Shown in pieces: positions 21,486 through 60,801 of a DNA stretch of 64,000 nucleotides. Position numbers and translations under genes: made by a program. Positions within the stretch are counted from its first letter, which is position 1. Each line of letters opens with the position of its first letter. The notes under the pieces were generated by a model. The model ran no database searches and had not been told where the DNA came from. It saw only the letters and a program-made list of their open reading frames with translations. This DNA comes from Macrostomum lignano (lineage: Eukaryota): contig NIVC01000010.1 in NCBI GenBank assembly GCA_002269645.1, positions 992,001-1,056,000 of the forward strand, written 5' to 3'.

Positions 21486-21691
21486 GGTGAATAATAATCA
21501 GTAAATAGTAAGCTTGTCAAAACGGAGAAAGCATGGATGGAGCAGGATCAACCAATCACAAAGCAGCTTTGTTCTCAGGTGTGGACGATTGGTCCAGTGG
21601 AAGCGGCAGCTCTATGGAACAAAGTTCTCTTTAACACAGCAGTTGCATGTAGAGCTACACGCATCCTGTGAAAGTTGTCCGAGAACACAAC

Positions 21692-27600: not shown

Positions 27601-30600
27601 AGTGCCAAAATGAGTGCCTGCAGTGCCAAAATGAGTGCCTGCAGTGCCAAAATGAGTGCCTGCGGTGCCAAAATGAGTGCCTGCGGCGCCAAAATGAGTG
27701 CCTGCTCCCGGCGCCAAAATGAGTGCCTGCGGCGCCAAAATGAATGCTTGACTGCGGCGCCAAAATGAGTGCCTGCGGCGCCAAAATGAGTGCCTGCAGT
27801 GCCAAAATGAGTGCCTGCAGTGCCAAAATGAGTGCCTGCAGTGCCAAAATGAGTGCCTGCAGTGCCAAAATGAGTGCCTGCAGTGCCAAAATGAGTGCCT
27901 GCGGCGCCAAAATGAGTGCCTGACTGCGGCGCCAAAATGAGTGCCTGACTGCAGTGCCAAAATAAGTGCCTGACTGCAGTGCCAAAATGAGTGCCTGACT
28001 GCAGTGCCAAAATGAGTGCCTGCGGCGCCAAAATGAGTGCCTGCGGCGCCAAAATGAGTGCCTGACTGCGGTGCCAAAATGAGTGCCTGCGGTGCCAAAA
28101 TGCTTGACTGCGGCGCCAAAATGAGTGCCTGCGGTGCCAAACTGAGTGACTGACTGCGGTGCCAAAATGAGTGCCTGCGGTGCCAAAATGCTTGACTGCG
28201 GCGCCAAAATGAATGCTTGACTGCGGCGCCAAAATGAATGCTTGACTGCGGCGCCAAAATGAATGCTGCGACACCAAAATGAGTGCCTGCAGTGCCAAAA
28301 TGAGTGCCTGCAGTGCCAAAATGAGTGCCTGCAGTGCCAAAATGAGTGTCTGACTGCGGTGCCAAAATGAGTGCCTGTAGTGCCAAAATGAGTGCCTGAC
28401 TGCGGTGCCAAAATGAGTGCCTGTAGTGCCAAAATGAGTGCCTGACTGCGGTGCCAAAATGAGTGTCTGACTGCGGTGCCAAAATGAGTGCCTGTAGTGC
28501 CAAAATGAGTGCCTGCAGTGCTAAAATGAGTGCCTGCAGTGCCAAAATGAGTGCCTGCAGTGCCAAAATGAGTTCTAACAAAACCGATTCTCAAATTAAA
28601 GTACATGCAGGAATTTAGTCATGTAAATGTAGAAGTTTTTGCTTTTCCCCCCACCTTAAATTCCATTAAGATAATAAGATTAAAAACTCAATAACAACTG
28701 TGAAAACTTGCTTACAAAAACTTTACCGCCAACTTTGTTCAATTAACAATTATTTAGCACTTCTAGGATTTGAAATCTTCTCTTCCATAATCATGTCTTA
28801 GATCATTTCTCCTGGTTTACCGTCTCATTTTTGTGTAATTCCCTCACAACTCGCCATCTGCAGCCAGTGTCGGTCACCGTGTCCGTACTGACGATGACAC
28901 TGAACTCGGTTGAGCGCCTACTTGCAGTCTGCTTCCCGATGAAAGTGAAAACAACTAAAAAACGAGTAGGCAGCCTCATCATACTGGCCTGGACCACTGC
29001 TCTGGCATCGAAGCTGCACTACCCCTTCACTATGGAGGCGGTCCCGTTCCCCAATCTGCCGAACGACACCGCCTTGCTGACCTCTTGCCGCTCCAATTGG
29101 AAACAGCTGGACCAGAACGGCACCGTCATTATCAATTTTGAAATTGGCGCCAGCATTCTTGATTCCTTGCTGTTCTTTGTCCTGCCGTTCGCATGGATGC
29201 TGGTGGCCTACAGCATGGTGTGTCATCGCCTGTGGCATGCTTCTGTGCCTGGGGAGGCCTCGCGTGTTCAGCAGGGGCGCAGTGAGAAATTTTTGTGCTT
29301 TTCAGTATATTTTATTAAATGTCTTGGCGTGCCCCTGATGCTAAAACCCCTTGGTGCTGAAACCCCTGGTGCTAAAGACCCCTGGTACTAAAGCCCTTGG
29401 TGCTAAAGCCCCTGGTGCTAAAGACCCCTGGTGCTAAAGCCCCTGGTGCTTAAACCCCTGGCCCTGGTGCAAAAGACCCTGGTGCTAAAGCCCCTGGTGC
29501 TAAAGACCCTGGTGCTAAAGACCCTGGTGGTAAAGACCCTGGTGCTAAAGACCCCTGGTGCTAAAGACCCTGGTGCTAAAGACCCTGGTGCTAAAGACCC
29601 TGGTGCTAAAGACCCTGGTGCTAAAGACCCTGGTGCTAAAGACCCTGGTGCTAAAGACCCTGGTGCTAAAGACCCTGGTGCTAAAGACCCTGGTGCTAAA
29701 GACCCTGGTGCTAAAGACCCTGGTGCTAAAGACCCTGGTGCTAAAGACCCTGGTGCTAAAGACCCTGGTGCTAAATTAAGACCCTGGTGCTAAAGCCCCT
29801 GGTGCTAAAGCCCCTGGTGCTAAAACCCCTGGTGCTAAAGCCCCTGGTGCCAATTAAGACCCTGGTGCTAAAGCCCCTGGTGCTAAAGCCCCTGGTGCTA
29901 AAACCCCTGGTGCTAAAGACCCCTGGTACTAAAGCCCTTGGTGCTAAAGCCCCTGGTGCTGAAGACCCTGGTGCTAAAGACCCCTGGTGCTAAAGCCCCT
30001 GGTGCTAAAGACCCCTGGTACTAAAGCCCTTGGTGCTAAAGCCCCTGGTGCTGAAGACCCTGGTGCTAAAGACCCCTGGTGCTAAAGCCCCTGGTGCTAA
30101 AGCCCCTGGTGCTAAAGACCCTGGTGCTAAAGACCCTGGTGCTAAAGCCCCTGGTGCTAAAGACCCTGGTGCTAAAGACCCTGGTGCTAAAGCCCCTGGT
30201 GCTAAAGACCCTGGTGCTAAAGCCCCTGATGCTAAAGCCTGATGCATTTGGTTAATTTAAAAATCATCCCATACGAGCACCTGACGCACTTGCTGTACAC
30301 CAGACACACCCAGCCACCATCGTGCTGGCAGCAGCCGCATCTCCGGATCTGGCCGGAGGTCGACATCCAGCGCTTTGCCAGCTTCCGCGGCTGCCTCGGC
30401 AGCCTCTCCGGACTCGACCCTGGCTCAGCGGAGGCGCACCGCCCTGATGCTGGTGTCCATCGTGCTCATCTTCTTCGTGTGCAACCTGCCTGTGCACATT
30501 ATGCGAGTGGCGTGAGTGTCTTTCGGATCTGTTGTAGATTCGGCTGCCCATGTGCTCACATGGTAGGCATATCAACTCGAATGAGACTCATCTCTATATT

Positions 30601-33411
30601 CAAATGAGAACCGTATTTACTCAGATAAGTACCAATGCCTACTCAGATGAGTACCAATGCCTACTCAGATGAGTACCAATGCCTACTCAGATGAGTAACA
30701 ATGCCTACTCAGATGAGTAACAATGCCTACTCAGATGAGTACCAATGCCTACTCAGATGAGTACCAATGCCTACCCAGATGAGTACCAATGTCTACTCAG
30801 ATGAGTACCAATGCCTACTCAGATGAGTAACAATGCCTATACTTAGATGAGTACCAATGCCTACCCAGATGAGTACAGATGTCTACTCAGATCAGTACCA
30901 ATGCCTACTTATTTGAAACGACATTGGACTCAAACAGTGCTCAAATCTAACGAAAATAAGTTGGACATCTCTCTTTCTCAAATAATTTTCAGAAATGTTT
31001 ACTTTTCGGGCAGGCAGTTCTCGCAGTCTCAGCACCACCTGAAAATTGCCATCCAGCACATTGCTGGCACAGCTCACTGGATTTGCTATTTCAATGCGGC
31101 AATCAACCCCATCGTGTACAACATACTGAGTGGTAGGTGACCAGTATTGCAACAGTGGAAGTGCTTTGGTTTTGTTAAAACTTGAATTCTTCACCTAATA
31201 TATAGGGTGTTCCTGTGAAGTGTCATTCCTGTCAATTGACATTCTTGTGAATTGACATTCTTAGGAATTAAAACTCTTGTAAATTAATATTCTTGTGAGC
31301 TGACATTCTTGTGAATTAACATTCTTGTGAATTAACCTTCTTGTGAACTAAAATTCTTTTAAATCGTCTTTCCTATGAATTTTTAATCATTTGAATTGTC
31401 ATTCCTGCGAATTGACACTGATGTTAGGTGTCACACTTGTGAAATTGAGTTCTGCTTGTGAAGGAGTGATAGATTAATGCCGAGAAGATCGAATGTTGAC
31501 AGTGGGAATCTGGCTGAGCTCGGGCCACATCTGGCACTTCGCGGCTGCATTGGCTTTCATTGACTTTTCATTTTATGCCAGCTGCTCAGACGACTTCATG
31601 TCGCTATTGAAATATTTATAAAAATCCTTAAAACTATATGCTCAATACTCAAGTCTACAGTGCCCAGGATGTGTTCTCATGTGGGACTATGCATCATGCA
31701 GCTTTATACCCAAAGCTCATCTCAGGAGAACTGCTATTAAGTTAAAAGGAATTTTATTATTTAACATTGATGACTTATTTCCATTAGCATGAGATAATTT
31801 TCATAAAGATTCTGTTAATGCCGAAAGAACCGCCCGTGAAGAGTTGGTGGACGAGGCACTGGGGCAAACTCCATGCAGCATTGCTCTGTGCTCACAACCC
31901 TGGATAATTGACAGTTTTAGAATCCGGGATCATTGAAACTTATTTTTAGTACTCTGGATCATTGCCACTTATTTTTAGTACTCCGGATCATTGACACTTA
32001 GTTAGAACTCCGGATCATTGACACTTATTTTTAGTACTCTGGATCATTGCCACTTAGTTAGAACTCCGGATCATTGACACTTATTTTTAGTACTCTGGAT
32101 CATTGCCACTTAGTTAGAACACTGGATAATTGCCACTTAGAACACTGGATGATTGCCACTTAGTTAAAACACTGGATGATTGCCGCTTAGTTAAAACACT
32201 GGATGATTGCCGCTTAGTTAGAACACTGGATGATTGCCGCTTAGTTAAAACACTGGATGATTGCCGCTTAGTTAGAACACTGGATGATTGCCGCTTAGTT
32301 AAAACACTGGATGATTGCCGCTTAGTTAGAACACTGGATGATTGCCGCTTAGTTAGAACCCTGGATAATTGCCGCTTAGTTAGAACACTGGATGATTGCC
32401 GCTTAGTTAGAACCCTGGATAATTGCCGCTTAGTTAGAACCCTGGATAATTGCCGCTTAGTTAGAACCCTGGATAATTGCCGCTTAGTTAGAACCCTGGA
32501 TAATTGCCGCTTAGTTAGAACCCTGGATGATTGCCGCTTAGTTAGAACCCTGGATAATTGCCGCTTAGTTAGAGCCCTGGATAATTGCCGCTTAGTTAGA
32601 ACCCTGGATAATTGCCGCTTAGTTAGAGCCCTGGATAATTGCCGCTTAGTTAGAACCCTGGATAATTGCCGCTTAGTTAGAGCCCTGGATAATTGCCGCT
32701 TAGTTAGAACCCTGGATAATTGCCGCTTAGTTAGAGCCCTGGATAATTGCCGCTTAGTTAGAACCCTGGATAATTGCCGCTTAGTTAGAGCCCTGGATAA
32801 TTGCCGCTTAGTTAGAACCCTGGATAATTGCCGCTTAGTTAGAGCCCTGGATAATTGCCGCTTAGTTAGAACCCTGGATAATTGCCGCTTAGTTAGAACC
32901 CTGGATAATTGCCGCTTAGTTAGAACCCTGGATAATTGCCGCTTAGTTAGAACCCTGGATAATTGCCGCTTAGATAGAGCCCTGGATAATTGCCGCTTAG
33001 TTAGAACCCTGGATAATTGCCGCTTAGATAGAGCCCTGGATAATTGCCGCTTAGTTAGAACCCTGGATAATTGCCGCTTAGTTAGAACACTGGATTTTAG
33101 CTGTCTTGAAAACATAACTGCATCGCACTCAATACTTTCTACTTATCAGTAGACGAACTCTGGCAACCCACGGCAATTTTCTCTGCTACCCCTCATTATC
33201 CACAGCAAAATTTCGCGAAGAGTTCCGACTCGTGATCCGGCGCTGGGTGCCTCGCTTCTGCCGCCGCTGTCGCGAAGACGAAGGCCTCAGCGCTGTCGCC
33301 CAGTCGGAGATTCTGCTGCGGCGCCGGCCCGCAGTGATGCTGCACTCCGGAAACTGGATGCCAATGATGCTAATGAGGAACTCGGCAGCTGGGGCTTCGA
33401 GCTACAGTTGA
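21692..33411 (+). CDS. Class A neuropeptide GPCR, orexin/allatotropin-receptor-like, 449 aa; exons 21692-22069, 28864-29281, 30304-30511, 30993-31132, 33206-33411
   Basis: [13 protein letters not shown] in TM1, [27 protein letters not shown]|[14 protein letters not shown] in TM6, [20 protein letters not shown]. Junctions close in frame (1350 nt). Confidence 0.87.
22590..23593. repeat. ACTAG-based compound satellite (CATAAACTAGACTAGATTAGAACTAGACTAG...), GPCR intron 1
   Basis: Direct periodicity. Confidence 0.92.
25668..28570. repeat. 21/25-bp minisatellite (CCAAAATGAGTGCCTGCGGTG) with higher-order blocks, GPCR intron 1
   Basis: About 2.9 kb; duplicated blocks offset by 611 bp and 690 bp. Confidence 0.95.
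29335..30240. repeat. 15/16-bp minisatellite (CCTGGTGCTAAAGAC / CCCCTGGTGCTAAAGC), GPCR intron 2
   Basis: Direct periodicity. Confidence 0.93.
30618..30905. repeat. 22-bp minisatellite (TACTCAGATGAGTACCAATGCC), GPCR intron 3
   Basis: Direct periodicity. Confidence 0.9.
31925..33090. repeat. 27-bp minisatellite (GGATAATTGCCGCTTAGTTAGAACCCT), GPCR intron 4
   Basis: Direct periodicity, with a degenerate left edge. Confidence 0.93.
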
Positions 33412-37057: not shown

Positions 37058-37940
37058 TAGCTGTCACATCTAGCTGTCACACTGCAGCACATCTAACTGT
37101 CACACTGCAGCACATCTAGCTGTCACACTGCAGCACATCTAGCTGTCACACTGCAGCACATCTAGCTGTCACACTGCAGCACATCTACCTGTCACACTGC
37201 AGCACATCTAGCTGTCACACTGCAGCACATCTAGCTGTCACACTGCAGCACATCTAGCTGTCACACTGCAGCACATCTAGCTGTCACACTGCAGTACATC
37301 TAACTGTCACACTGCAGCACATCTAGCTGTCACACTGCAGCACATCTAACTGTCACACTGCAGCACATCTAGCTGTCACACTGCAGCACATCTAGCTGTC
37401 ACACTGCAGCACATCTAACTGTCACACTGCAGCACATCTAGCTGTCACACTGCAGCACATCTAACTGTCACACTGCAGTACATCTAACTGTCACACTGCA
37501 GCACATCTAGCTGTCACACTGCAGCATATCCACCTGTCACACTGCAGCACATCTAGCTGTCACACTGCAGCACATCTAGCTGTCACACTGCAGCACATCT
37601 AGCTGTCACACTGCAGCACATCTAGCTGTCACACTGCAGTACATCTAACTGTCACACTGCAGCACATCTAGCTGTCACACTGCAGCACATCTAACTGTCA
37701 CACTGCAGCACATCTAGCTGTCACACTGCAGCACATCTAGCTGTCACACTGCAGCACATCTAACTGTCACATCTAGCTGTCACACTGCAGCACATCTAGC
37801 TGTCACACTGCAGCACATCTAGCTGTCACACTGCAGCACATCTAGCTGTCACACTGCAGCACATCTAGCTGTCACACTGCAGCACATCTAGCTGTCACAC
37901 TACAGCACATCTAGCTGTCACACTGCAGCATATCCACCTA
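37058..37940. repeat. 23-bp minisatellite (GCTGTCACACTGCAGCACATCTA)
   Basis: Period 23 (37081/37104). Confidence 0.93.
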
Positions 37941-38242: not shown

Positions 38243-40775
38243 TTAATATTCGTCAGGCTCGCCGTTGTCGGCGGCCTCTGGCGGGGCGAAGCCCTCCTCA
38301 GTCTGGTACAGCACGTCCAGAATGCGGTGAATCTGTTCGCTGTCCTCGGACTCCTGGCAGATGATCTCCACGCTGCGCAGCTTGTTAAAATAGAAGTCCC
38401 GCTCCTTCATCAGGCCGTCAATGCTCTGCTGGTCTTCGTTGTGCTGCTGGTTCAGGTCGTCCACCTGGGGAGGGCGGCCCGGCGAATGGGGAGGATTAGG
38501 TGGCTGATGGCCCTGGAGGTGTGGGATTAAGCTTGCTGCTGGATGTGGGATTAAGCTTGCTGCTGGGTGTGGGATTAAGCTTGCTGCTGGGTGTGGGATT
38601 AAGCTTGCTGCTGGATGTGGGATTAAGCTTGCTGCTAGGTGTGGGATTAAGCTTGCTGCTGGGTGTGGGATTAAGCTTGCTGCTGGATGTGGGATTAAGC
38701 TTGCTGCTAGGTGTGGGATTATGCTTGCTGCTGGGTGTGGGATTAAGCTTGCTGCTGGGTGTGGGATTAAGCTTGCTGGTGCTCGTGTGGGATTAAGCTT
38801 GCTGGTGCTGGTGTGGGATTAAGCTTGCTGCTGGGTGTGGGATTAAGATTGCTGGTGTGGGATTAGGCTCACTGGTGCTGGTGCTAACTGGAACACAAGT
38901 ACGCACCTGGATACGCAGTTCGGCCATCTCAGCCTCCAGCCGCTGCTGGTTAGCATTGGGAGCCGCTGCCGGCTGGTGGGCCGGAGCTGGCGGATGCGCT
39001 GGCGCCGGGGCGGCAGCGGCTCTTGTTGGCACCGGCTTCGGCGGCGTCCGATTCGGCTGCCGCATGCCTCCGCCGGCGCCGGCAGGGGCGCGGCCAGCAG
39101 CTGGGCCGGCGGCAGGCGCCCGGTTGTCGCCTCTAGCAGCAGCCGGAGCCGCCGCAGGCTGACTGTGCGCGCCGGCGGGCCTGGCCTTGCCAGAGCCGGT
39201 GATTGGCTCGCCGCCGCGGGCAGCCAGGGCGTCGTATTCGATTCCGGTGTAATTGGCGTCGAAGAATCGTTTGAACCATTGCACGAATTCGAAGTTGTCT
39301 TGGAAACGCGCTTTGACCAGGCGCTCGATTGGTACCTCCTGGGTAATAGTTTGATGGTTGAAATCGTTTTGGTGGAAACTTTTAACTAATTCTGGAGTTT
39401 GGAGGGAATTCCCGCAGTGAATGACCTTGGGGGAACTCTAATCATACTTAGAATGGAAGTCCCGCAGTGAATGACCTTGGGGGAACTCTAATCATACTTA
39501 GAATGGAAGTCCCGCAGTGAATGACCTTGGGGGAACTCTAATCATACTTAGAATGGAAGTCCCGCAGTGAATGACCTTGGGGGAACTCTAATCATACTTA
39601 GAATGGAAGTCCCGCAGTGAATGACCTTGGGGGAACTCTAATCATACTTAGAATGGAAGTCCCGCAGTGAATGACCTTGGGGGAACTCTAATCATACTTA
39701 GAATGGAAGTCCCGCAGTGAATGACCTTGGGGAACTCTAATCATACTTAGAATGGAAGTCCCGCAGTGAATGACCTTGGGGAACTCTAATCATACTTAGA
39801 ATGGAAGTCCCGCAGTGAATGGCCTTGGGGGAACTCTAATCATACTTAGAATGGAAGTCCCGCAGTGAATGACCTTGGGGGAACTCTAATCATACTTAGA
39901 ATGGAAGTCCCGCAGTGAATGACCTTGGGGGAACTCTAATCATACTTAGAATGGAAGTCCCGCAGTGAATGACCTTGGGGGAACTCTAATCATACTTAGA
40001 ATGGAAGTCCCGCAGTGAATGACCTTGGGGGAACTCTAATCATACTTAGAATGGAAGTCCCGCAGTGAATGACCTTGGGGGAACTCTAACGTCTCTAATC
40101 ATACTTAAAATGGAAGTCCCGCAGTGAATGACCTTGGGGGAACTCTAACGTCTCTAATCATACTTAAAATGGAAGTCCCGCAGTGAATGACCTTGGGGGA
40201 ACTCTAATCATACTTAAAATGGAAGTCCCGCAGTGAATGACCTTGGGGAATTTCTAATCATACTTAGAATGGAAGTCCCGCAGTGAATGACCTTGGGGGA
40301 ACTCTAATCATACCTAGAATGGAAGTCCCGCAGTGAATGACCTTGGGGGAACTCCAATCAAACTCACAATGGAATTTCCAAATTGAACGACCTTGGGGAA
40401 CTCCATATCTCACCTTATCAACGCCGTGTTTTTTAAACAGTGCCTGCAGCACTTTGAAATTGCTGATAAACTCGTGCTCTAATTTGGTATTAAATTTCAC
40501 CTTTTTAAAGGGCAGAGTACCTGAATAATGATGAATTTGATGATGTTAGAATAAGTAAAAAACAAAAACACTGCATTATTTAATAAATGAATAATGTAAA
40601 ACGTACCCGGAAACAGCATGTCCATAAATTGGCAATAGACAGCCCCAGAGGCTAGTTCTTCAATTTTGCCTAAATTGGCCTGCAAACAGGTATTAATCCA
40701 ATCCAGGATGTCATGCCTACTCAAATTATCAGTTGTTTGCGATGTCGAGTGAACGTTGACAGCTTGCTGGGCCAT
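38243..40775 (-). CDS. MAPRE1: Microtubule end-binding protein EB1, 309 aa; exons 40775-40607, 40520-40414, 39338-38907, 38464-38243
   Basis: CH domain [12 protein letters not shown]...[33 protein letters not shown]; [16 protein letters not shown]; acidic tail ending EY. 930 nt in frame. Confidence 0.95.
38515..38875. repeat. 24-bp minisatellite (GTGTGGGATTAAGCTTGCTGCTGG), EB1 intron 3
   Basis: Direct periodicity. Confidence 0.9.
39408..40400. repeat. 50-bp minisatellite (GAATGGAAGTCCCGCAGTGAATGACCTTGGGGGAACTCTAATCATACTTA), EB1 intron 2
   Basis: Period 50 (39451/39501). Confidence 0.93.
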
Positions 40776-50032: not shown

Positions 50033-50997
50033 CTCTCAAAAGGTATCATCTAGGTACTAACAAGTAGCAAAAGCTCGGGAACATGCCCCACAAATCGAAT
50101 GGCGCCTAAAGCCCGCCCCCAAAAAATCAATTTCAAGCTATGAAAGAATAGTCGAAGAAAGCTGCACCAGAAAGTCGAGGCACCTGCATTCAAACCTGTC
50201 CTGACCTCCACGGTTGAGAGTAGTTTGTTTTAAAATATTCAAACAATTTAATGTATGAGATGGTTTACGGCAAACATCAGAAAATCTCTGAGAAACTACA
50301 GACCGTATTTGCTTGAGATTTGACAATATTTGCATTCGGCGAACAATCAAAGAAGCCTAAACTGATGACGGCTTGAGCTGTATTTAAGAGTTGCAGTAGG
50401 GCGCCAACGGCAGTACTTTAAACTGCTGCCTCTCCCATTCGACCTGCAGTTGCCGCAGGTTTCCTGAGTTTGTCTATAGTCAGAGAAAATAAGACCGAAC
50501 TCTGCTATAACAGTATACGTCACCGCTACTCTCGTCTTTCTATCTTCTCTATGCGTCTTCTCTTCTTTCCACTTAAAAAAACAGGCCTCAGTGCTCACTA
50601 CGTTTAGCTTGTCCTTTTCTTTAGCATTGGCAGATTAGAACTGATGGAGAGAGAAATTTTCTCACGTGACAATCATATAGATCTACTTTTTCAGCCGACT
50701 GTTCAACGCTGGCTGGCCTAGAGAGCGGGTATGAAATTATGTATAATAATTAATTGCTGCAGCAGCTGATAGAGATGATGGTGCAGCGGAAAAGATTGGA
50801 TAGAGAAAAAACGCAGAAGGAGCTTTCATGACGACAGACGCGGTCAGCTGCACAGTTTTAATTGCCAACTGAAAAGAGCTCACACTCAGACAACTAGTAC
50901 AATTGAGGGCCAAAAAACTTTACAGTAACCATAGTCTAAAACATTGACAGACAAAGCTAGACAAGTTTCCTAATCAGGTCTAATAAGATCAAACGAA

Positions 50998-53900
50998 ATG
51001 TCGTCGCCAGTGGAGTCAGCGAAGCGCGATCTGGCTCGTGCACTTCGCTCCGAGGAGCCTCATCGAGTCAAAGCGATACTTCGGTCGCCAGTTGCCGACC
51101 TGGCTTGGCTAGACAAGCCGCTAGACAGGTAACTGCGGTTAAATGTACATACGCACAATCGGTAGAAAACGTTGGGAGCACTGGATATACTGTACCAATA
51201 CGTCCAATATTTATAAGCTGCAGTACGCACCTCTAACTTTCAGTTCGTTGCAGCTTGAAAGGGGCTGCAGCATTTTCTGGCAGCATGCAGCTTGAAAACC
51301 TGCAGGGTTAAGACCATAGACTATAGCTTCTACTGCTCAAAGCAAAATCTGACTGATGTGGTTGCTATGCTATAATGTCTGTGGCCCCAAGGGGCACCAA
51401 GGGGCACCAAGGGGCCCCAAGGGGCTTTAGCACCAAGGGGCTTTAGCACCAAGGGGCTTTAGCACCAAGGGGCTTTAGCACCAAGGGGCTTTAGCACCAA
51501 GGGGCTTTAGCACCAAGGGGCTTTAGCACCAAGGGGCGCCAGCACCAAGGGGCGCCAGCACCAAGGGGCGCCAGCAACAAGGGGCGCCAGCACCAAGGGG
51601 CGCCAGCACCAAGGGGCTTAGCACCAAGGGGCTTTAGCACCAAGGGGCTTTAGCACCAAGGGGCTTTAGCACCAAGGGGCTTTAGCACCAAGGGGCTTTA
51701 GCACCAAGGGGCTTTAGCACCAAGGGGCTTTAGCACCAAGGGGCTTTAGCACCAAGGGGCGCCAGCACCAAGGGGCGCCAGCACCAAGGGGCTTTAGCAC
51801 CAAGGGGCGCCAGCACCAAGGGGCGCCAGCACCAAGGGGCGCCAGCACCAAGGGGCGCCAGCACCAAGGGGCGCCAGCACCAAGGGGCGCCAGCACCAAG
51901 GGGCGCCAGCACCAAGGGGCGCCAGCACCAAGGGGCGCCAGCACCAAGGGGCGCCAGCACCAAGGGGCGCCAGCACCAAGGGGCGCCAGCACCAAGGGGC
52001 GCCAGCACCAAGGGGCGCCAGCACCAAGGGGCGCCAGCACCAAGGGGCGCCAGCACCAAGGGGCGCCAGCCGCTTTATTTAGTTTAACCCCTTCTTACTA
52101 AAATAGCTTGGTTCTCTTAGTTCGGAATGTACGACTAAACGGATGCATATTGCAATTTAACGTTTTCACAACAGAGACGGCAGCTGCGCTCTGCACATCG
52201 GCTCCTATTGCGGCCAGGAGGTTGGCGTTCACGCCTTGCTAGAATTCGGCTGCGACCCGAACGTCACCAATCAGAACGGAGAGACTCCGCTGCACGTGGC
52301 AGCCGAGCAGCGGTTCGAGCACATGATCGACCTGCTGGTCGATGCCGAGGGAATCCGGCTTGATGCGGCTCGAAAGCTGGACAGGCGGACTGCGCTGCAC
52401 ATTGCCGCCAGTCACGGCTGTTGCGACGGCGTGCGAAGACTTCTGGAAGCCGGAGCTGGCATCGATGTTCGGGATCGGGACGGCAACACACCGGTGTTCC
52501 TGGCTGTCCAGAACAACAAGTGAGGATTTAGTTTACCTGATGGGTAGCCACGCTTTGTACTTTAAGTAGAAGGACGCACCAAAACAAGACACATCTTGAC
52601 AACAATTTCCCGCAGACACCGCGTAGTTCACGAGCTGGTCTCTCAGGGCGCTAATTTGAAGCTGAAGAACAACGGCTTGCAGACTTGCTTGGCATTTGCC
52701 ATGAAGCAGAGCCAGGATAAAGCCATGATCAAACTGCTTGTTGAGCGCAAGTCCACCATGGCTCCTCAGCCTGGCACTAGCAGGCAGGCAGCCGTTCGAG
52801 CTACCCGAATTGACAATGCTGCACAGAAGCAACAGTCGATGGCAGGTAGAGATCTGCCTAATCAGGGTAGATTTTTTATGACCGAGTCGCATAGTAACAA
52901 ACTTGACCGGCCGAATCTCACACCCAGCAGACAGCTATGGCAGCAGCACCCTCAGGTATGGCAGTTTCCAACCGATTGTATAAATCGGTTCTGTAGGTTT
53001 CGATGAGCTTAATTTATTCATTAGCTAAAGGGGGTTGTAGTAGCCCAGTGGTTTGAGCGTCGCCTGCGTCGGAGTCCCGACTTGAAAGGTCGGGGGTTCG
53101 ATTCTCGACCCACTCGGAACAATTTGTGTCCTTGTGTCCTGAGCAAGACACTCAACTCTGCATTGCTTCAGTTTACCCAGCTGTAAAATGGGTGCCAGCA
53201 TTAGCTGGGGCAATTGAGGGTGTGTGTGGCGACCCCCCCCCCACCCCCAGTCCTTGGACTGAACGCTCAATATCTGGGGCTGAGCTGTCGGTTGCACATC
53301 TGCCCATTATTAATATTATTATGACTATCAAATCTCATACCCGCAGACTCGACATCAACAATCGGTCATTCCGGAAGAGCCAACAAAGCATCCTCAAGCA
53401 GCCCAGCACCCTCAGTACCACCAGCAGAAGCAGCAACAGCAGCAACAACAGCAGCACAGGCTTAGCAACGCAAATTACTCGCGCCAACGCGACACGAAAA
53501 GCGCCGGTGTTCAAGCAACCCCGGCCGAATCAGACCAAGAAGATGATGACGAAGAGGATGCATACAGCATGGACAGCAAAATCCGCGGCTTGTGCATCAT
53601 CGTGAACAATCAGGATTACTTCAACTCCGACGATTTCAAAGAACGCGCCGGAACAGATCTGGACGAGAGGCGCTTGGAGCGACTATTTAAATCGTTGCGC
53701 TTTCACGTCAAGATATTCAAGAATCTGGACGCCAAGGATATCTACTGGAACCTCAGCAACTATGCCAAGAGCGATCACAGCGGGTATGACTGTTACGTCT
53801 GCTGCATCCTGTCTCACGGCACTCTCGGTGGGATCTACGGAGTTGATGGACGAGTGCAGAAACTGTCCGACCTCACCGTGATGCTCAGCAGCACCAATTG

Positions 53901-54916
53901 TCCGTCGTTGGCTGGCAAGCCAAAACTGTTCTTTATCCAGGTGAGTTTCACAGCTGTACGGGTCTCGGCAATCCTCTACTTTCGCACGTTTAATTATTTT
54001 TCGAAAAATAACGACTTCCTTAGTTACCGCGAGTAAATATTTGAACTCGCGCGAGTGTAGAACGTGGCAGTGTATCGATTTTATGTCTATGTATACTAGT
54101 TTGAGGTGGCTATTGGCTATGTCTATGGCCAAAACCTGCAATCGCTCTCTGTTCAGGTTTTGGCCATAGACAATCGCTCCCTGTTTATTTGAAAAGGGAC
54201 TGAGGCAAGAGAGGGATGGGCCGTATTCTGAGAGATCTCTTGTCTTACTTGCTTTCTTGTCAATCTTGAGCAACAATGGGCCCATGCTAAGGCCCGGTTC
54301 AGGGCTATGCATGGCACATCTAAGGCCCTGTTCGACACCCACGTAGATGAGTTTCTGTGGCGCCGTTGCCACCCGCGCAACACCTTCGGCAACATACTTT
54401 TCTGGGTGGCGCACTACTACGATGTTTAATGCAACCGAACGTGATGTAACAAACTCGCTCATACCTGAGATGAGTCTCAAAGTCTTGAAGTTGACCGCCT
54501 GAACTTCGAAACCCATGCATCTTTAGGCTTGTCGAGGCCGCTGTCTCCAGCGAGGCGCGCACCATTTCACCGGCGATCGCGACCCGGCCATGATCCCGAT
54601 GGCCAACCACGAGACGGACGCGCTGTCAGCCGGCCCAGACCAAGAGTACATCCTGCCTGATCACGGCGACTTCTTGATTGGCTACGCCACGGTGGCTCAG
54701 CACATCGCCCAGCGGCACCGGGAGCAGGGCTCCGTGTACGTGCAGACCCTCTGCGACGTTATCGAACGCGGCAGGCACAAGGAGGACCTGCTCAGTCTGC
54801 TCACCAAAGTCAAATACCGCGTGTCGAAGCACGTGTTCCACAATGAAGACGGCAGCGTGTTCGTTCAGATGCCCGAAGTAAAGGAAACTCTGCGCAAGAA
54901 GATCTACTTTAAGTAG
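50998..54916 (+). CDS. Ankyrin-repeat caspase, 599 aa; exons 50998-51128, 52175-52519, 52616-52955, 53347-53940, 54527-54916
   Basis: Ankyrin motifs GSCALHIG, GETPLHVAA, RTALHIAA, GNTPVFLA. PolyQ/acidic linker. Caspase RGLCIIVNN, RAGTDLD, CCILSHG, GKPKLFFIQ|ACRG, DFLIGYATV, GSVYVQTLC. 1800 nt in frame. Confidence 0.88.
51385..52070. repeat. 16-bp minisatellite (AGCACCAAGGGGCTTT / AGCACCAAGGGGCGCC), caspase intron 1
   Basis: Direct periodicity; reverse complement resembles the 29.3-30.2 kb unit. Confidence 0.93.
53026..53320 (+). mobile_element. CORE-type SINE, copy 3, in caspase intron 3 (internal 3' deletion)
   Basis: A box TAGCCCAGTGG, B box GGTTCGATTCT, shared core. Confidence 0.82.
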
Positions 54917-55504: not shown

Positions 55505-55672
55505 TTCCTGACCCCATCAGCGACATCTGCATCAATGAGCCTGACAGTCTTCCTGACCCCATCAGTGACATCTGCATCAATGAGCCTGACAGTCTTCCTG
55601 ACCCCATCAGCGACATCTGCATCAATGAGCCTGACAGTCTTCCTGACCCCATCAGTGACATCTGCATCAATG
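55505..55672. repeat. 45-bp tandem repeat, about 3.7 copies
   Basis: CCTGACCCCATCAGYGACATCTGCATCAATGAGCCTGACAGTCTT. Confidence 0.88.
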
Positions 55673-55687
55673 AGATTGTGTCTCCCT

Positions 55688-56780
55688 CAAACACAAACTC
55701 TCTCTCTTAAACACAGACTCTCTCTCTTAAACACAGACTCTCTCTCTTAAACACAGACTCTCTCTCTCAAACACAGACTCTCTCTCTTAAACACAGACTC
55801 TCTCTCTTAAACACAGACTCTCTCTCTTAAACACAGACTCTCTCTCTTAAACACAGACTCTCTCTCTCAAACACAAACTCTCTCTCTTAAACACAGACTC
55901 TCTCTCTCAAACACAAACTCTCTCTCTTAAACACAGACTCTCTCTCTTAAACACAGACTCTCTCTCTCTTAAACACAGACTCTCTCTCTTAAACACAGAC
56001 TCTCTCTCTTAAACACAGACTCTCTCTCTCTTAAACACAGACTCTCTCTCTTAAACACAGACTCTCTCTCTTAAACACAGACTCTCTCTCTCTCTTAAAC
56101 ACAGACTCTCTCTCTTAAACACAGACTCTCTCTCTCTTAAACACAGACTCTCTCTCTCAAACACAAACTCTCTCTCTTAAACACAGACTCTCTCTCTTAA
56201 ACACAGACTCTCTCTCTTAAACACAGACTCTCTCTCTTAAACACAGACTCTCCCTCTTAAACACAGACTCTCTCTCTCTCTTAAACACAGACTCTCTCTC
56301 TTAAACACAGACTCTCTCTCTTAAACACAGACTCTCTCTCTTAAACACAAACTCTCTCTCTTAAACACAGACTCTCTCTCTTAAACACAGACTCTCTCTC
56401 TTAAACACAGACTCTCTCTCTTAAACACAGACTCTCTCTCTCTTAAACACAGACTCTCTCTCTTAAACACAGACTCTCTCTCTCTCTTAAACACAGACTC
56501 TCTCTCTTAAACACAGACTCTCTCTCTCTCTTAAACACAGACTCTCTTAAACACAGACTCTCTCTCTCTCTTAAACACAGACTCTCTCTCTTAAACACAG
56601 ACTCTCTCTCTCTCTTAAACACAGACTCTCTCTCTTAAACACAAACTCTCTCTCTGAAACACAAACTCTCTCTCTTAAACACAGACTCTCTCTCTTAAAC
56701 ACAGACTCTCTCTCTCTTAAACACAGACTCTCTCTCTCTTAAACACAAACTCTCTCTCTTAAACACAGACTCTCTCTTCA
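55688..56780. repeat. ~20-bp variable minisatellite AAACACAGA(CT)nT
   Basis: Direct periodicity with variable CT number. Confidence 0.93.
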
Positions 56781-57163
56781 ACACAGGCAACGCATTTCAA
56801 CATGTGTCAACGACCGTAAGAAATCAAAATGAGATTGGAATGAAAAACTCAAGCTAATTAATAGATATTTTCTGTATGCTTGGAACAATAAGTTGGTGGT
56901 AGAAACTAACGTACAGTAATGAGATTTAAATTGTTTAGCTGTATTTGCCTTTTAGTATCTTTTTAATAAAAACCAAAGATAAACCAATCGATTTTGAATA
57001 AATTGAATATTGAATAAGCTGATATTGATCGAGAACAATGGAGACACTAGCTCGGGGGTCAGTTCAAGACAACTGAGGATAATTTAGACAACGGACAGGG
57101 GGATAGAATTTAGTTAGTTATATAAGCTGTTGATCGGCTGCAAGCCACCACTGCTGCGTTCGC

Positions 57164-57512
57164 TCAATCGTGCATCGGAAACGTGAACTGGAAGTTCTTG
57201 CAGATGCAATGGCAAACACTTCGCTTTGGCGGCCCGGCCATGGCGCAGGTCGGCACCCTGTAGCAGGAGAGCCGGCACACATTCTGCCAGTAGAGCTGCG
57301 TGTTAACTGCAAGGTGAGGCGAAATGAGATTTATTCAAAGCTACTGCATAACAAAAACATCGAATCGGCAATGTCTTACTCCAGTTGATCGGCCAACGCT
57401 TTGTCATCGACAGTTGCGGCACGTCGTTCTTCCCTTTGGCGCTATCCGCACCAGTCAGCAGACAGGCCAGCATGGCCATGCCAGCCAGACAATAGACAGT
57501 AGCAGCCTGCAT
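57164..57512 (-). CDS. Small secreted 6-cysteine peptide precursor, 91 aa; exons 57512-57380 and 57306-57164
   Basis: Signal-peptide-like N-terminus and KR site. A 73-nt GTAAGA...TTGCAG intron gives MQAATVYCLAGMAMLACLLTGADSAKGKNDVPQLSMTKRWPINWINTQLYWQNVCRLSCYRVPTCAMAGPPKRSVCHCICKNFQFTFPMHD. Confidence 0.72.
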
Positions 57513-58884
57513 GATTGCGTTGCTAGAAATTTAGTCAGCAAGTTTTCTACAAAACTGACAAATCTGGGGCTGAATAAAAATCTCCCTGGCTGACGATGTC
57601 TTTTATAGACGATGGTCGGGATTTTCACCAGCCAATCAGAAATTGTCAATGATTTCATCAACGCTTGAAACGTTCAAGGATTCTAAGAGAGTTCTAAGTA
57701 AAAATTGAGAGAAATTTGCTCCAGAAACGAAAAGAATCAGAGAAAGCTCTAGAAAATTCCAGGATATCTTATGAGATTGTGAAATTTTGTTTGAAAGCTC
57801 TCAATAAACCATCAGATTGTTTTATAGTCCTGAGGAATATGCTTAGACTTATATTTAGACATTGTAAGAAGTCTCTAGGTCACATTTGGGGGGAGGTGTT
57901 TCACAGATGTTACAATTAGTGACCAGTGATTAGTGACAAACAACAATTTAAAAGGTTACAAGTGCTACAGTTTCCTTTCGCAGAATGATTTGTAAATCTA
58001 GCGACAAGGTACAAGCTCTCAAAATAGTGACTCAAAATATGTATATGGCCAAATCAACCACTGAGCTCCTGGCTCTGGAAAACTTCAGAGAATGAGCTGA
58101 GACACGGCTTCAGTGTTCAGCGGTCACTGTACCAGTGGAATTCATGGTTCCAAGCTTCAACGTAGCTATACATAGATCAATCCAATATATTTATAATCGT
58201 TTTTACCGAATCTTTTCTTCAATCTTCACGTCGATATCCTAGTCTTCTAGGTCAGAAATAGCCGCAAGTCTGCACAAAAACACCTGTAACCAACTGCTTG
58301 ATTCGTATTCCGTAGGCAACCGAGCATATAACGAGGCCCTAGGCATATAACAAAACACCTGCAAAAACCCTCCTTTACCAGCATCAATTTTTATCCAGAG
58401 AGAGTAGTTACCGTGGGCGTCAATTTTCTGCAATTTTCTGTCCCTTTCTTTACTTCCGCAGTGTCGGGATTTGGGTGTGACAACCATTTTTTCACCTACG
58501 CCGCCTCACAATAATGGCCACCCACGGCTCACAGCTTTTGGACGCTGAAATCAGTTGAAACGGCCTTTCTAAATCCTTAATTTCGTATGACAAGCACAAC
58601 ATTAGACTGTAAAAACTAGCACACAAGCTTACCAGAAGCTCGCTGCGACTTAATTTTATAACCGAACTTTTATTACTCTGTCTTATACTGAATCTCAGCA
58701 ATTTGCTGTCATATTGGACTTGCGGTATCTTATCTACTGTATCATGACTGCAGCTCATATCAATACCGAACCAGCTGTGGGCACAAATGCTCGTACATAC
58801 GAGCTTATAAGTACTCGAGATTTGGTACAGCCCCAGGCATGTCTCTACATTCTGCAACCTGTCTCGCCGTTTGAAAAAGAAAAA

Positions 58885-60801
58885 ATGGTGAATTTCTGCA
58901 ACGCATTTCCGTTGCTTATAGCGCTGAGCTGGCATTTTCTTTCCAGTGCTCTGGGTCAGAAGCTTATCGTGGAAACGGATGACGCAATCTACCGCGGTCG
59001 GGTGCTGTCTCTAAACAACCAACAGCTTCAACAGCAAACTGTTGCCTTCCTGGGCATTCCATACGCTCAGCCGCCGATCAATGAGCTTCGATTCGCAGCC
59101 CCGTTGCCATGGAGACCGACAATTCCCGAAGGAAACTCATCGTTCAAAGCCGAGCTAAACGCCACCAGAGCGGGACCGGCCTGCCTGCAGCGATCAGACC
59201 AGAGTGGCACCCCTGGCCGCATGTCTGAGGACTGCCTGTACCTGAATGTGCACTCGCCTCCTGGAGTTCAAGGACGTCCCAAACCGGTGCTGGTCTGGCT
59301 GCACGGCGGGTTCTTTGAAACCGGTTCAGTCAGCGACCCGGACCAGACTGGCACCTGCTTCGGTTGGGATCTGGTAGCAACGCGCCAGAGCATGCTGCTA
59401 GTTGAGGCCGCCTACCGTCTAGGAGTGTTTGGCTTCCTAGCCGAGCCGGAGCCCGCCAACGGCAATGCCGGCCTGAAGGACCAGCAGATGGCGCTGGCCT
59501 GGGTTGCTAAGAACATCGTCCACTTTGGCGGTAACAATCGCTCAGTGACTCTGGCAGGCCTTGACGCTGGAGCTGCAGCCGTCGGATTTCACATGCTGAG
59601 TCCCGGCAGCAGGGACCTCTTTCAGAGAGTCGTCTTCCTCGGGGGCAGCCCCCTTGCAGGCTGGGCTTTCGTGCGAGATCTTCAAGCGCTGCGTACAGCA
59701 CACGAAGCCTTCTACAATCTGACAGGCTGCACAGACCATGATGAGCTGCTTAGTTGCTTGCGCACTCTTCCAGCGGACGAATTGAACTCTCACCAATCAA
59801 AGTTTAATCAGGTATTTGATCGGGTCGAGTTTCCAGTGATTGTTGATGGCCAGTTTCTACAGTCAGATCCTGTCGAGGCTTTTGAGCGGGGCAATTTCGA
59901 GTCAAAAGCAGTCATCATTGGCGTGACCAGTTTGGAAGGAATTCAGCTAGCCTACAGAGCCCTCGGGGCGTTCAACGTCACGAACCAGTGGAATTTGACC
60001 GGCCAAGTTCACTTGGATTTGCTTGCTGAAGCCTTTCGCTACGTACCTCGTTTTCCAGAGGAGCCAGCGCCTCTGGCAAGCGAGTTTCTGCAGCTGACAT
60101 TGACATCCTATCCGGGCGAAAACTTGGGCGCTCGAAATTTCCGGCTGCTGACGAGCGCTCTATCGGAGCAGGCGGTGGTGTGCGACTCAAACCGGATGGC
60201 CGACCTTCTGCTCCAAGCTGCCAACGGGAGTTCGGACACATTTTTCTACCAGCTCGACGAGCCTGATAGCAACACAGATGAGTACCTGGGCGCCGGGCAT
60301 GGCAAAGACGCCGCCTACTTCACCGGCGAACCACTGCGACGAGCTGACTATGATGCAGAGCAGAAAGGATTGTCTAATTCAATGATGGCCATGCTGACAA
60401 CATTTCTAGACAGTGGGAACGTCACCGTGACTGGCTGGAAGCCGACCAGTCAACAGGGACTGGAGTTTTACAGATTCAGAGCGTCAAGGAGCGCCGATTA
60501 CCGCTCGGAGATGGTCAGTGGCGGATTCAAGCGACAGGACTGCCGTCTGTGGTCTGAAGTCATGCCTCGGCTGAGTGTTGCAACGCCGACTACTTCAGCT
60601 GAACCGGACGTTGACACCGAGGCTAAGTTCTGGGAGCGCTGCAACACAACGATAAACTTGGTGAGCGTCATTGTCATGGGCGTCGGCGGAGGCTTGATCC
60701 TGCTTTTGATCGTCTGCGTTGTCATTGTGGCCAGAGATCGTTACAGTAGTTCGCACGATTTCATTGAGCTTCATCAGCGTGTCAAACCATTGGGAAAATA
60801 G
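58885..60801 (+). CDS. Cholinesterase-like type I membrane protein, probably non-catalytic (neuroligin/gliotactin-like), 638 aa, intronless
   Basis: Signal peptide; FLGIPYAQPP..LRF, SEDCLYLNV, WLHGGF, GNAGLKDQ..AL.WV..NI..FGG; nucleophile elbow reads GLDAG (no Ser); C-terminal TM helix and short tail. Confidence 0.88.
   Translation: MVNFCNAFPLLIALSWHFLSSALGQKLIVETDDAIYRGRVLSLNNQQLQQQTVAFLGIPYAQPPINELRFAAPLPWRPTIPEGNSSFKAELNATRAGPACLQRSDQSGTPGRMSEDCLYLNVHSPPGVQGRPKPVLVWLHGGFFETGSVSDPDQTGTCFGWDLVATRQSMLLVEAAYRLGVFGFLAEPEPANGNAGLKDQQMALAWVAKNIVHFGGNNRSVTLAGLDAGAAAVGFHMLSPGSRDLFQRVVFLGGSPLAGWAFVRDLQALRTAHEAFYNLTGCTDHDELLSCLRTLPADELNSHQSKFNQVFDRVEFPVIVDGQFLQSDPVEAFERGNFESKAVIIGVTSLEGIQLAYRALGAFNVTNQWNLTGQVHLDLLAEAFRYVPRFPEEPAPLASEFLQLTLTSYPGENLGARNFRLLTSALSEQAVVCDSNRMADLLLQAANGSSDTFFYQLDEPDSNTDEYLGAGHGKDAAYFTGEPLRRADYDAEQKGLSNSMMAMLTTFLDSGNVTVTGWKPTSQQGLEFYRFRASRSADYRSEMVSGGFKRQDCRLWSEVMPRLSVATPTTSAEPDVDTEAKFWERCNTTINLVSVIVMGVGGGLILLLIVCVVIVARDRYSSSHDFIELHQRVKPLGK

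What the first reader, a model, noticed from the sequence alone, without database searches (positions are those of the whole stretch)
57164..57512. Unannotated secreted peptide with a defensin/mytilin-like cysteine pattern
Seen: invisible to the ORF track because of a 73-nt intron. Signal peptide, short pro-region and KR, then a 52-aa Trp/aromatic-rich peptide with C-x3-C-x5-C-x10-C-x-C-x-C. Known: CS-alpha-beta defensins pair CxxxC with CxC, and the mytilin core has similar spacing. Inference: a new antimicrobial peptide, toxin or cysteine-rich neuropeptide. It lies tail to tail with the caspase gene.
Basis: partly seen in the sequence, partly recalled or inferred. Interest (0 to 1): 0.7.

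Follow-up and report, generated by a model that had tools for sequence, protein, structure and literature searches.

The report
Orphan flatworm secreted cysteine-rich peptide gene
This is a real two-exon gene of the flatworm Macrostomum lignano (or a sibling species) that encodes a small secreted peptide with six cysteines; it has no detectable relatives outside that animal, its defensin-like build is plausible but unproven, and its function is unknown.

Summary
On the minus strand, exon 1 (57512-57380), a 73-nt GT-AG intron (57379-57307) and exon 2 (57306-57164) encode a 91-aa precursor. It has a hydrophobic leader, a short propeptide ending in KR, and a 52-aa cationic, aromatic-rich peptide with C-x3-C-x5-C-x10-C-x-C-x-C.

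The gene is real. A second copy in the M. lignano assembly Mlig_3_7 keeps the splice sites, the promoter boxes and the caspase neighbour. It differs by 7 synonymous and 2 non-synonymous changes (dN/dS 0.07, p = 4e-4), none in the mature peptide.

It is not unannotated in public data. That copy is "hypothetical protein" PAA70134.1, and UniParc holds a 91-aa version.

No Pfam family, PDB sequence or protein among 1.84 billion representatives matches it.

AlphaFold2 on the exon-2 peptide (pLDDT 81) gives helix-strand-strand-strand. CxxxC lies on the helix and CxCxC on the middle strand. That is compatible with a defensin-like helix-to-strand staple, but Foldseek finds no defensin, mytilin or toxin.

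My best guess is an extracellular defence (antimicrobial-type) peptide, at about 0.4. A hormone or a gland or seminal secretion remains a serious rival. Interest is moderate to low.

The parts
57632..57636 (-). Inverted CCAAT box (reads ATTGG on the gene strand), about 25 nt upstream of the TATA box.
   Evidence: Read directly from the sequence. It lies in a stretch nearly identical between the window and L001 (alignment A1 columns 23-106). Its function is inferred, not tested.
57601..57607 (-). TATAAAA box, 89-95 nt upstream of the ATG.
   Evidence: Read directly and identical in L001. One caveat: the public 140-aa gene model starts upstream of it, so the true transcription start is not established.
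57380..57512 (-). Exon 1 coding part (133 nt): the start codon, the leader, the propeptide and the first 5 1/3 codons of the mature peptide.
   Evidence: An in-frame TAA lies 7 codons upstream of the ATG. Against L001 there are 7 differences, of which 5 are synonymous.
57447..57512 (-). Predicted signal peptide, residues 1-22 (cleavage after A22, or alternatively after S24).
   Evidence: Hydrophobicity profile and the -3/-1 small-residue rule. This is a heuristic only.
57396..57446 (-). Short basic propeptide, residues 23-39, ending in the dibasic site K38-R39 (codons at 57401-57396).
   Evidence: The KR is conserved in L001 (KKR), whereas residue 37 differs (T versus K).
57307..57379 (-). Intron of 73 nt, phase 1, GTAAGA donor, pyrimidine-rich tract and TTGCAG acceptor.
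   Evidence: Both splice sites are identical in L001, and the intron has 4 differences in 73 nt, against 2 in 143 nt for exon 2. PAA70134.1 and UPI0007A231D6 use the same junction.
57164..57306 (-). Exon 2 coding part (143 nt including the TGA): residues 45-91, holding all six cysteines of the mature peptide.
   Evidence: There are 0 amino-acid changes and 2 synonymous changes against L001. The AlphaFold2 model has pLDDT 81, with H2-14, E19-23, E28-34 and E39-43.
56962..56967 (-). Candidate poly(A) signal ATTAAA, 196 nt downstream of the stop codon.
   Evidence: Pattern scan. It is the only AATAAA or ATTAAA within 360 nt after the stop. Not verified.

Best explanation
Shown, with about 0.9 confidence: this is a genuine two-exon protein-coding gene of Macrostomum lignano or a very close relative. 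It encodes a 91-aa secretory prepropeptide and evolves under purifying selection. No relatives were detected outside this animal.

Inferred processing:
- Signal peptidase removes about 22-24 residues.
- A KR-specific proprotein convertase then removes a 15-17-residue basic propeptide.
- This releases a 52-aa, roughly 6.2-kDa, cationic (+4), aromatic-rich peptide with three disulfides.

Inferred fold: an N-terminal helix carrying C-x3-C packs on a three-stranded sheet whose middle strand carries C-x-C-x-C.
- The likeliest disulfide pairing is C1-C5 and C2-C6, a cysteine-stabilised alpha/beta-type staple.
- C3-C4 would then close the first hairpin.

Most likely role, at about 0.35-0.4: an extracellular defence effector of the antimicrobial-peptide type, built like a defensin but not demonstrably a member of that family.
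For: Gene model:
- One search gives the spliced ORF. An in-frame stop lies upstream of the ATG.
- The second copy, L001 (NIVC01001264.1), shares the same intron, promoter boxes and caspase neighbour.
- dN/dS is 0.07, from 7 synonymous and 2 non-synonymous changes, with Fisher p = 4e-4. The 52-aa mature part has no change.
- The proposed frame is the best of all six.

Transcript support, indirect:
- Mlig_3_7 gene models come from a genome-guided transcript assembly plus TransDecoder (PMC5730564).
- PAA70134.1 carries exactly this junction.

Orphan status:
- One cluster only in 5.8 billion clusters.
- Only itself plus one spurious repeat protein among 1.84 billion representatives.
- No Pfam hit and no PDB sequence hit.

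Fold:
- AlphaFold2 from a single sequence gives pLDDT 81 for the exon-2 peptide, with H2-14, E19-23, E28-34 and E39-43.
- The whole-precursor model shows the same elements.
- CxxxC (C10, C14) falls in the helix and C31/C33 in the strand.

Lean towards defence:
- Net charge +4, pI 8.9, 8 aromatic residues in 52.
- From general knowledge, taxon restriction is typical of effector peptides.
- As I recall, insect defensin precursors have the same signal, propeptide, KR and mature-peptide layout.
Against: - No expression, peptide or activity data were reachable. Four supplement searches and a sequence-string search of the literature found nothing.
- Foldseek found no defensin, mytilin or toxin for either model.
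- The helix is only weakly amphipathic (hydrophobic moment 0.1-0.2).
- The 64-kb window holds no paralogue, whereas antimicrobial-peptide and toxin genes often sit in tandem families.
- The mature peptide is perfectly conserved between the two copies. That fits a hormone at least as well as a defence peptide.
- The disulfide pairing is deduced from secondary structure only. The structure tool returns no coordinates.
Confidence: 0.4

Rival explanations
1. It is a cysteine-rich signalling peptide: a neurohormone, hormone or pheromone. The 52-aa disulfide-locked peptide would be released from secretory granules by prohormone-convertase cleavage at KR and would act on a receptor.
For: - The precursor is short, holds a single peptide and has a conserved dibasic site.
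- It is present once in the window and once in L001, with no tandem family.
- The mature peptide has no amino-acid change between copies, while synonymous and intron sites diverge by 5-13%.
- From general knowledge, known neurohormones such as eclosion hormone, the CHH/ITP family and trissin are also three-disulfide peptides.
Against: - There is no amidation signal.
- It has no similarity to any Pfam family or to any protein of other flatworms in the large databases. Large cysteine-rich hormones are usually conserved well beyond one genus.
- No published M. lignano or flatworm paper in the library prints this sequence.
Confidence: 0.25
2. It is a gland secretion unrelated to immunity, for example a seminal-fluid (prostate) protein, or a product of pharyngeal, rhabdite or adhesive glands. 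In Macrostomum, such gland products are often taxon-restricted secreted proteins.
For: - It is an orphan secreted protein.
- The library holds work titled 'RNA-Seq of three free-living flatworm species suggests rapid evolution of reproduction-related genes' (PMC7336406) and an in situ screen that identified putative seminal fluid proteins (PMC5977470). I saw only their titles and abstract openings. Rapid evolution of that kind would explain the lack of relatives.
- A TATA-type promoter suits a tissue-specific, highly expressed gene; this is inference.
Against: - Purifying selection is strong (dN/dS 0.07) rather than the fast evolution expected of seminal-fluid proteins.
- No expression data could be tied to this gene.
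Confidence: 0.17
3. It is a small canonical-type serine-protease inhibitor or an ion-channel toxin. The exposed 10-residue loop C-AMAGPPKRSV-C would be closed by the C3-C4 disulfide and would present K/R-S as a reactive site, or the scaffold would block a channel.
For: - The model puts GPPK in the turn between strands 1 and 2, flanked by C20 and C31.
Against: - No sequence or fold match to any inhibitor or toxin family.
- As I recall, M. lignano grazes on diatoms, so a prey-capture venom is unlikely.
- The internal KR could equally be a second convertase site.
Confidence: 0.1
4. It is not a functional gene: a chance ORF plus a chance GT-AG, or a decaying pseudogene.
For: - The ORF is short, and no direct read-level RNA evidence was seen here.
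- The window's exact product is absent from the protein collection.
Against: - Frame-specific conservation: dN/dS 0.07 with p = 4e-4, and the proposed frame is the best of six.
- Splice sites, start and stop are conserved.
- Two public models, PAA70134.1 and UPI0007A231D6, share the same junction.
- A confident fold is predicted from a single sequence.
Confidence: 0.03

Closest known systems
Cysteine-stabilised alpha/beta (cis-)defensins of insects, molluscs, nematodes, fungi and plants
   Same: - A small cationic secreted peptide with three disulfides.
- A CxxxC motif predicted on a helix and a CxC motif predicted on a beta-strand that runs parallel to it after one intervening strand.
- As I recall, insect defensin precursors have the same layout of signal peptide, propeptide ending in KR, then mature peptide.
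   Different: - There is no cysteine before the helix, so the canonical N-terminus-to-strand disulfide cannot exist. The third pair must be C3 with C4 or C6.
- The model has an extra C-terminal strand, so the CxC strand is not the final one. The definition in PMC7203481 requires the final strand.
- No Pfam hit and no Foldseek hit.
- I found no report of cis-defensins in Platyhelminthes. The single paper holding both terms does not link them.
Mytilins (mussel antimicrobial peptides)
   Same: The C-terminal C-x(10-11)-C-x-C-x-C spacing and an N-terminal C-x3-C. Both are cationic. The mytilin pattern is recalled from memory, not fetched.
   Different: - As I recall, mytilins have eight cysteines (C-x3-C-x3-C-x4-C...C-x-C-x-C-x2-C), are about 34 aa long, and carry a C-terminal anionic extension rather than an N-terminal propeptide. 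I know them only from bivalves.
- Here there are six cysteines, the third lies after a proline outside the predicted helix, and the peptide has long aromatic N- and C-terminal extensions.
- No sequence similarity was detected.
Disulfide-rich neurohormone precursors (eclosion hormone, CHH/ITP, trissin)
   Same: A signal peptide, a dibasic processing site and a single mature peptide with six cysteines. The mature part is strongly conserved.
   Different: The cysteine spacing is unrelated, and no profile or sequence match was found. As I recall, those families are conserved across phyla, whereas this one is seen only in M. lignano.
Designed helix-strand-strand-strand disulfide miniprotein gHEEE_02 (PDB 5w9f)
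   Same: Same order of secondary-structure elements and similar size. It was a Foldseek match to the whole-precursor model, with TM-score 0.62 normalised to the target over 38 columns (rank 15).
   Different: E-value 4.6 and 10% identity, and the protein is artificial. This is a topological analogy only and has no evolutionary meaning.

Membership tests
CS-alpha-beta / cis-defensin superfamily | A CxxxC motif located in an alpha-helix. | tested here: met
   The AlphaFold2 model of the exon-2 peptide (pLDDT 81) has a helix at residues 2-14 that contains C10 and C14. This is a prediction, not an experiment.
CS-alpha-beta / cis-defensin superfamily | A CxC motif in the final beta-strand, tied to the helix by two parallel disulfides (definition quoted from PMC7203481). 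| tested here: inconclusive
   CxCxC lies on strand 28-34, which is followed by a further strand at 39-43, so it is not the final strand in the model. The disulfide pairing could not be read because no coordinates are returned.
CS-alpha-beta / cis-defensin superfamily | In six-cysteine members, a third disulfide from a cysteine N-terminal to the helix to the first post-helix strand (spacing C...CxxxC...C...CxC). | tested here: not met
   The first cysteine of the mature peptide is the first C of CxxxC, and none precedes it.
CS-alpha-beta / cis-defensin superfamily | Profile or structural similarity to known members. | tested here: not met
   Pfam gives 0 families at E <= 10. The PDB sequence search gives 0 hits at E <= 10. 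Foldseek against the PDB gives a best E of 0.97-1.0, and no defensin or scorpion toxin appears among the 50 matches listed for either model. Foldseek is weak on peptides this small.
Mytilins | An eight-cysteine array with C-x3-C-x3-C on the helix matched to C-x-C-x-C on the strand, plus a fourth pair. | tested here: not met
   There are only six cysteines. The spacing after CxxxC is x5 with a proline, and the helix is predicted to end before the third cysteine. The mytilin pattern is recalled from memory.
Mytilins | A precursor made of signal peptide, mature peptide and a C-terminal anionic extension. | tested here: not met
   Here an N-terminal basic propeptide precedes the mature peptide, and the ORF ends 11 residues after the last cysteine.
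Neuropeptide / prohormone precursors (functional class) | A signal peptide and conserved basic cleavage sites flanking the bioactive peptide. | tested here: met
   A hydrophobic leader, and KR at residues 38-39 conserved in L001. These features are shared with antimicrobial-peptide precursors, so they do not discriminate.
Neuropeptide / prohormone precursors (functional class) | Expression in neurons or endocrine cells and a cognate receptor. | not testable with these tools
   No expression data could be linked to the gene.
Inhibitor cystine knot peptides | Six cysteines with short loops 3 and 5 compatible with a knot (usually an adjacent or near-adjacent C3-C4, and a loop 5 of 4 or more residues). 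| tested here: not met
   Loop 3 is 10 residues and loop 5 is 1 residue. The model is alpha/beta rather than an all-beta knot. The loop ranges are recalled from memory.

The most novel reading that the evidence does not exclude
This is the first defensin-type host-defence peptide of a flatworm (cysteine-stabilised alpha/beta). It would use a previously undescribed six-cysteine framework (C1-C5, C2-C6 and C3-C4) on a helix-strand-strand-strand scaffold with Trp-rich extensions. It arose, or diverged beyond recognition, within Macrostomorpha.
Probability: 0.2. Interest if true: 0.6.

Novelty: new variant of a known kind. Interest (0 to 1): 0.33.

Why it matters
As far as I know and could find here, flatworms have almost no characterised gene-encoded antimicrobial or defensin-like peptides. 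M. lignano is a transgenic, RNAi-amenable model animal.

If this peptide is a defence effector with a new disulfide framework, two things follow:
- It would extend the range of the helix-to-strand stapled scaffold to another phylum.
- It would give an easily testable entry point into flatworm innate immunity.

If instead it is a hormone or a seminal-fluid peptide, it is a lineage-specific signal that could be studied in the same system.

As it stands, it is one more orphan small secreted cysteine-rich peptide. Invertebrate genomes contain many of these. The practical gain is a corrected gene model: 91 aa rather than the public 140 aa.

Tried and rejected
I used the 98%-identical P0001 and the exon-2 translation instead.
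- P0001 itself has no contig on record.
- The only non-self HMMER hit, P0003 (E = 5.5e-4), is a 1318-aa Arg/Glu-rich repeat protein. It matches the leader and propeptide region six times and has no cysteine pattern. Rejected as spurious.
- tblastn of the precursor and of the mature peptide against the whole window found no paralogue.
- Foldseek of the full-precursor model (pLDDT 57) and of the exon-2 model (pLDDT 81) gave only chance-level matches: SH3 domains, ribosomal proteins and a dsRBD.
- Searches for 'Mlig007017' in main texts and in the supplements of four M. lignano expression papers found nothing. The stored files are truncated, so this is weak negative evidence.
- No paper prints any 8-mer of the peptide.
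- The 140-aa public model was rejected as the true product. In the window the extension is out of frame because of a 1-nt indel, and a TAA lies 7 codons upstream of the ATG.
- An alternative internal acceptor (TTATGCAG, inside the intron) was rejected because it runs into a stop after 13 codons.
- Plus-strand ORFs overlapping the locus (72 and 89 aa) were rejected because substitutions are not frame-biased there.

Full report
**1. What is in the sequence**

The feature lies on the minus strand.
- An ATG at 57512 opens a 133-nt coding exon that ends at 57380.
- A 73-nt intron follows at 57379-57307. It has a GTAAGA donor, a pyrimidine-rich tract and a TTGCAG acceptor, and it is phase 1.
- A 143-nt exon at 57306-57164 ends in TGA.

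Splicing gives a 91-aa product: MQAATVYCLAGMAMLACLLTGADSAKGKNDVPQLSMTKR / WPINWINTQLYWQNVCRLSCYRVPTCAMAGPPKRSVCHCICKNFQFTFPMHD.
- Residues 6-19 form a hydrophobic core, with small-residue cleavage candidates after residue 22 or 24.
- K38-R39 precedes a 52-aa region with 6 Cys, 3 Trp, 2 Tyr and 3 Phe. Its pI is 8.9 and its net charge about +4.
- The cysteine spacing is C-x3-C-x5-C-x10-C-x-C-x-C.
- An in-frame TAA lies seven codons upstream of the ATG.
- A TATAAAA box (57607-57601) and an inverted CCAAT box (57636-57632) lie upstream.
- An ATTAAA lies 196 nt after the stop.

**2. Whose genome, and is the gene annotated?**

The word-indexed protein search found a single cluster. It holds P0001, a 91-aa UniParc entry (UPI0007A231D6) that is 98% identical, and P0002. 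P0002 is PAA70134.1, "hypothetical protein BOX15_Mlig007017g1" of Macrostomum lignano, 140 aa.

The neighbouring carboxylesterase ORF (58714-60801, PF00135 at E = 2.6e-99) has its best hits in M. lignano, at 97% and 91% identity. The window therefore comes from M. lignano or a sibling species.

The window's own product is not in the collection.

The 140-aa model is a longest-ORF artefact. Mlig_3_7 models were made by TransDecoder on genome-guided transcripts (PMC5730564). In the window the extension is interrupted by a 1-nt indel and the TAA. Because that annotation is transcript-based, the public model with the same junction is indirect evidence for a spliced mRNA. I did not see reads.

**3. 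Is it more than chance?**

The contig carrying PAA70134.1 was fetched as L001 (NIVC01001264.1). It is collinear with the window. The peptide gene faces an Ank + Peptidase_C14 (caspase-type) gene tail to tail in both.

In the 640-nt alignment the start, stop, both splice sites, the TATA box and the CCAAT box are identical. The coding sequence differs at 9 positions: 7 synonymous and 2 non-synonymous. The non-synonymous changes are G11A in the leader and T37K in the propeptide.

| Measure | Value |
|---|---|
| dS | 0.130 |
| dN | 0.009 |
| dN/dS | 0.07 |
| One-sided Fisher p | 4e-4 |
| Mature peptide | 0 non-synonymous, 2 synonymous |
| Exon 2 divergence | 1.4% |
| Intron divergence | 5.5% |
| Flank divergence | 7-9% |

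Of the six possible frames, the proposed one has the fewest amino-acid changes in both exons. This is a protein-coding gene under purifying selection.

The 3.3% coding and about 5.4% local DNA divergence exceed the 1.1% and 2.2% reported between M. lignano subgenomes (PMC10733133). The two copies may therefore be unusually diverged homeologues, or orthologues in sibling species. Either way the selection argument holds.

**4. Relatives**

None was detected.
- Pfam: 0 families at E <= 10.
- PDB sequences: 0 at E <= 10.
- Exhaustive phmmer against 1.84 billion representatives: only the query cluster and P0003. P0003 is a repeat protein that matches the leader region and is spurious.
- No paralogue in the 64-kb window.

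For a 52-aa domain, E-values against libraries this large cannot reveal distant relatives. "Orphan" therefore means no relative closer than roughly 35-40% identity among annotated proteins. Other Macrostomum genomes could not be reached with these tools.

**5. Fold**

| AlphaFold2 input (single sequence) | Mean pLDDT | Helices | Strands |
|---|---|---|---|
| Whole precursor (P0001) | 57; about 70 in the mature part | 6-20 (leader), 44-60 | 65-67, 75-80, 84-88 |
| Exon-2 peptide, 46 aa (window:57167-57304:-) | 81 | 2-14 | 19-23, 28-34, 39-43 |

In the 46-aa numbering:
- C10 and C14 (CxxxC) are in the helix.
- C20 is in strand 1.
- C31 and C33 are in strand 2, and C35 sits at its end.

With a GPPK turn at 24-27, C20 lies opposite C31. 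Strand 2 runs in the same direction as the helix. The simplest pairing is therefore C20-C31 plus C10-C33 and C14-C35. That would be a cysteine-stabilised alpha/beta-type staple plus a hairpin clamp. This is inference from secondary structure, because no coordinates are returned.

Foldseek against the PDB gave no match better than E = 0.97 for either model. No defensin, mytilin or toxin appeared among the 50 matches listed for each. The only small disulfide-rich match was a designed helix-strand-strand-strand miniprotein (5w9f, TM-score 0.62 on the target, E = 4.6).

**6. Comparison with known families**

- The motif requirements are met at the prediction level: CxxxC on a helix and CxC on a strand.
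- The canonical third disulfide cannot form, because no cysteine precedes the helix.
- The CxC strand is not the last strand in the model.
- Neither profile nor fold search recognises the peptide.

It may work like a defensin, but it cannot be filed as one.

As I recall, mytilins share the C-x(10-11)-C-x-C-x-C tail but have eight cysteines and a different precursor layout, so this is not a member. The loop lengths (x10 and x1) and the predicted helix argue against an inhibitor cystine knot.

**7. Function**

Nothing reachable here says where or when the gene is expressed. My weighting is as follows.

| Reading | Weight | Main reasons |
|---|---|---|
| Defence / antimicrobial-type effector | about 0.4 | Cationic and aromatic-rich; taxon-restricted; defensin-like precursor and predicted staple |
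| Hormone or neuropeptide | 0.25 | Single copy; perfectly conserved mature peptide; conserved KR. Against it: no amidation signal and no conservation outside the species |
| Other gland or seminal secretion | 0.17 | Orphan secreted protein. Against it: the strong purifying selection |
| Protease inhibitor or channel toxin | 0.1 | Exposed loop C-AMAGPPKRSV-C with K/R-S |
| Artefact | 0.03 | No read-level RNA evidence seen here |

The internal PKR|S site might instead be a second convertase site, which would give a two-chain peptide.

**8. Verdict**

It is a new sequence family of a familiar kind, the small secreted disulfide-rich peptides. Its cysteine framework is non-canonical, and its function is still open. 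Interest is moderate to low unless expression or activity data tie it to flatworm immunity.

Noticed in passing
window 55505-56777: The 2.25-kb gap between the converging ends of the caspase gene and the peptide gene is almost entirely minisatellite. There is a 45-bp unit x3.8 at 55505-55674 and a 20-bp unit (TCTCTCTTAAACACAGACTC) x53 at 55681-56777. L001 aligns to this stretch at only 83% identity, against about 95% in the genes.
   Followed up: partly
window 1-64000 (e.g. 17884-19135, 20117-21488, 25681-28573, 31946-33095, 37065-37934, 39405-40403): The window is packed with roughly 25 distinct tandem arrays of 15-101-bp units. Several are longer than 1 kb, and the largest is a 21-bp unit x129 at 25681-28573. 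This may explain the strong local swings in GC content and skew.
   Followed up: no
window 51417-52070: A 16-bp tandem repeat (CCAAGGGGCGCCAGCA x41, 97% matches) lies inside the span of the Ank + Peptidase_C14 (caspase-type) gene. L001 aligns to it in many registers. I did not determine whether it is intronic or coding. Long minus-strand ORFs through it are probably repeat artefacts.
   Followed up: no
window 50772-54916 (+), L001:4445-8258: The neighbouring gene combines ankyrin repeats with a Peptidase_C14 caspase domain (599-aa model in L001). I do not recall ankyrin repeats as a usual caspase prodomain. The domain order was not examined.
   Followed up: no
window 58714-60801 (+): A single uninterrupted 695-aa ORF encodes a carboxylesterase/cholinesterase-type protein (PF00135, E = 2.6e-99) with a hydrophobic C-terminal segment (…LVSVIVMGVGGGLILLLIVCVVIVA…). 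It lies head to head with the peptide gene, about 1.2 kb from the peptide's ATG. Public M. lignano models for it are shorter (467-494 aa, 91-97% identical).
   Followed up: partly
window 57068-57690 vs L001:1508-2130: Divergence between the window and the Mlig_3_7 copy is about 5.4% locally and 3.3% in the coding sequence. That is two to three times the 2.2% and 1.1% reported between M. lignano subgenomes (PMC10733133). No window protein tested is 100% identical to a public M. lignano protein. The window may come from another strain or assembly, or from a sibling species.
   Followed up: partly
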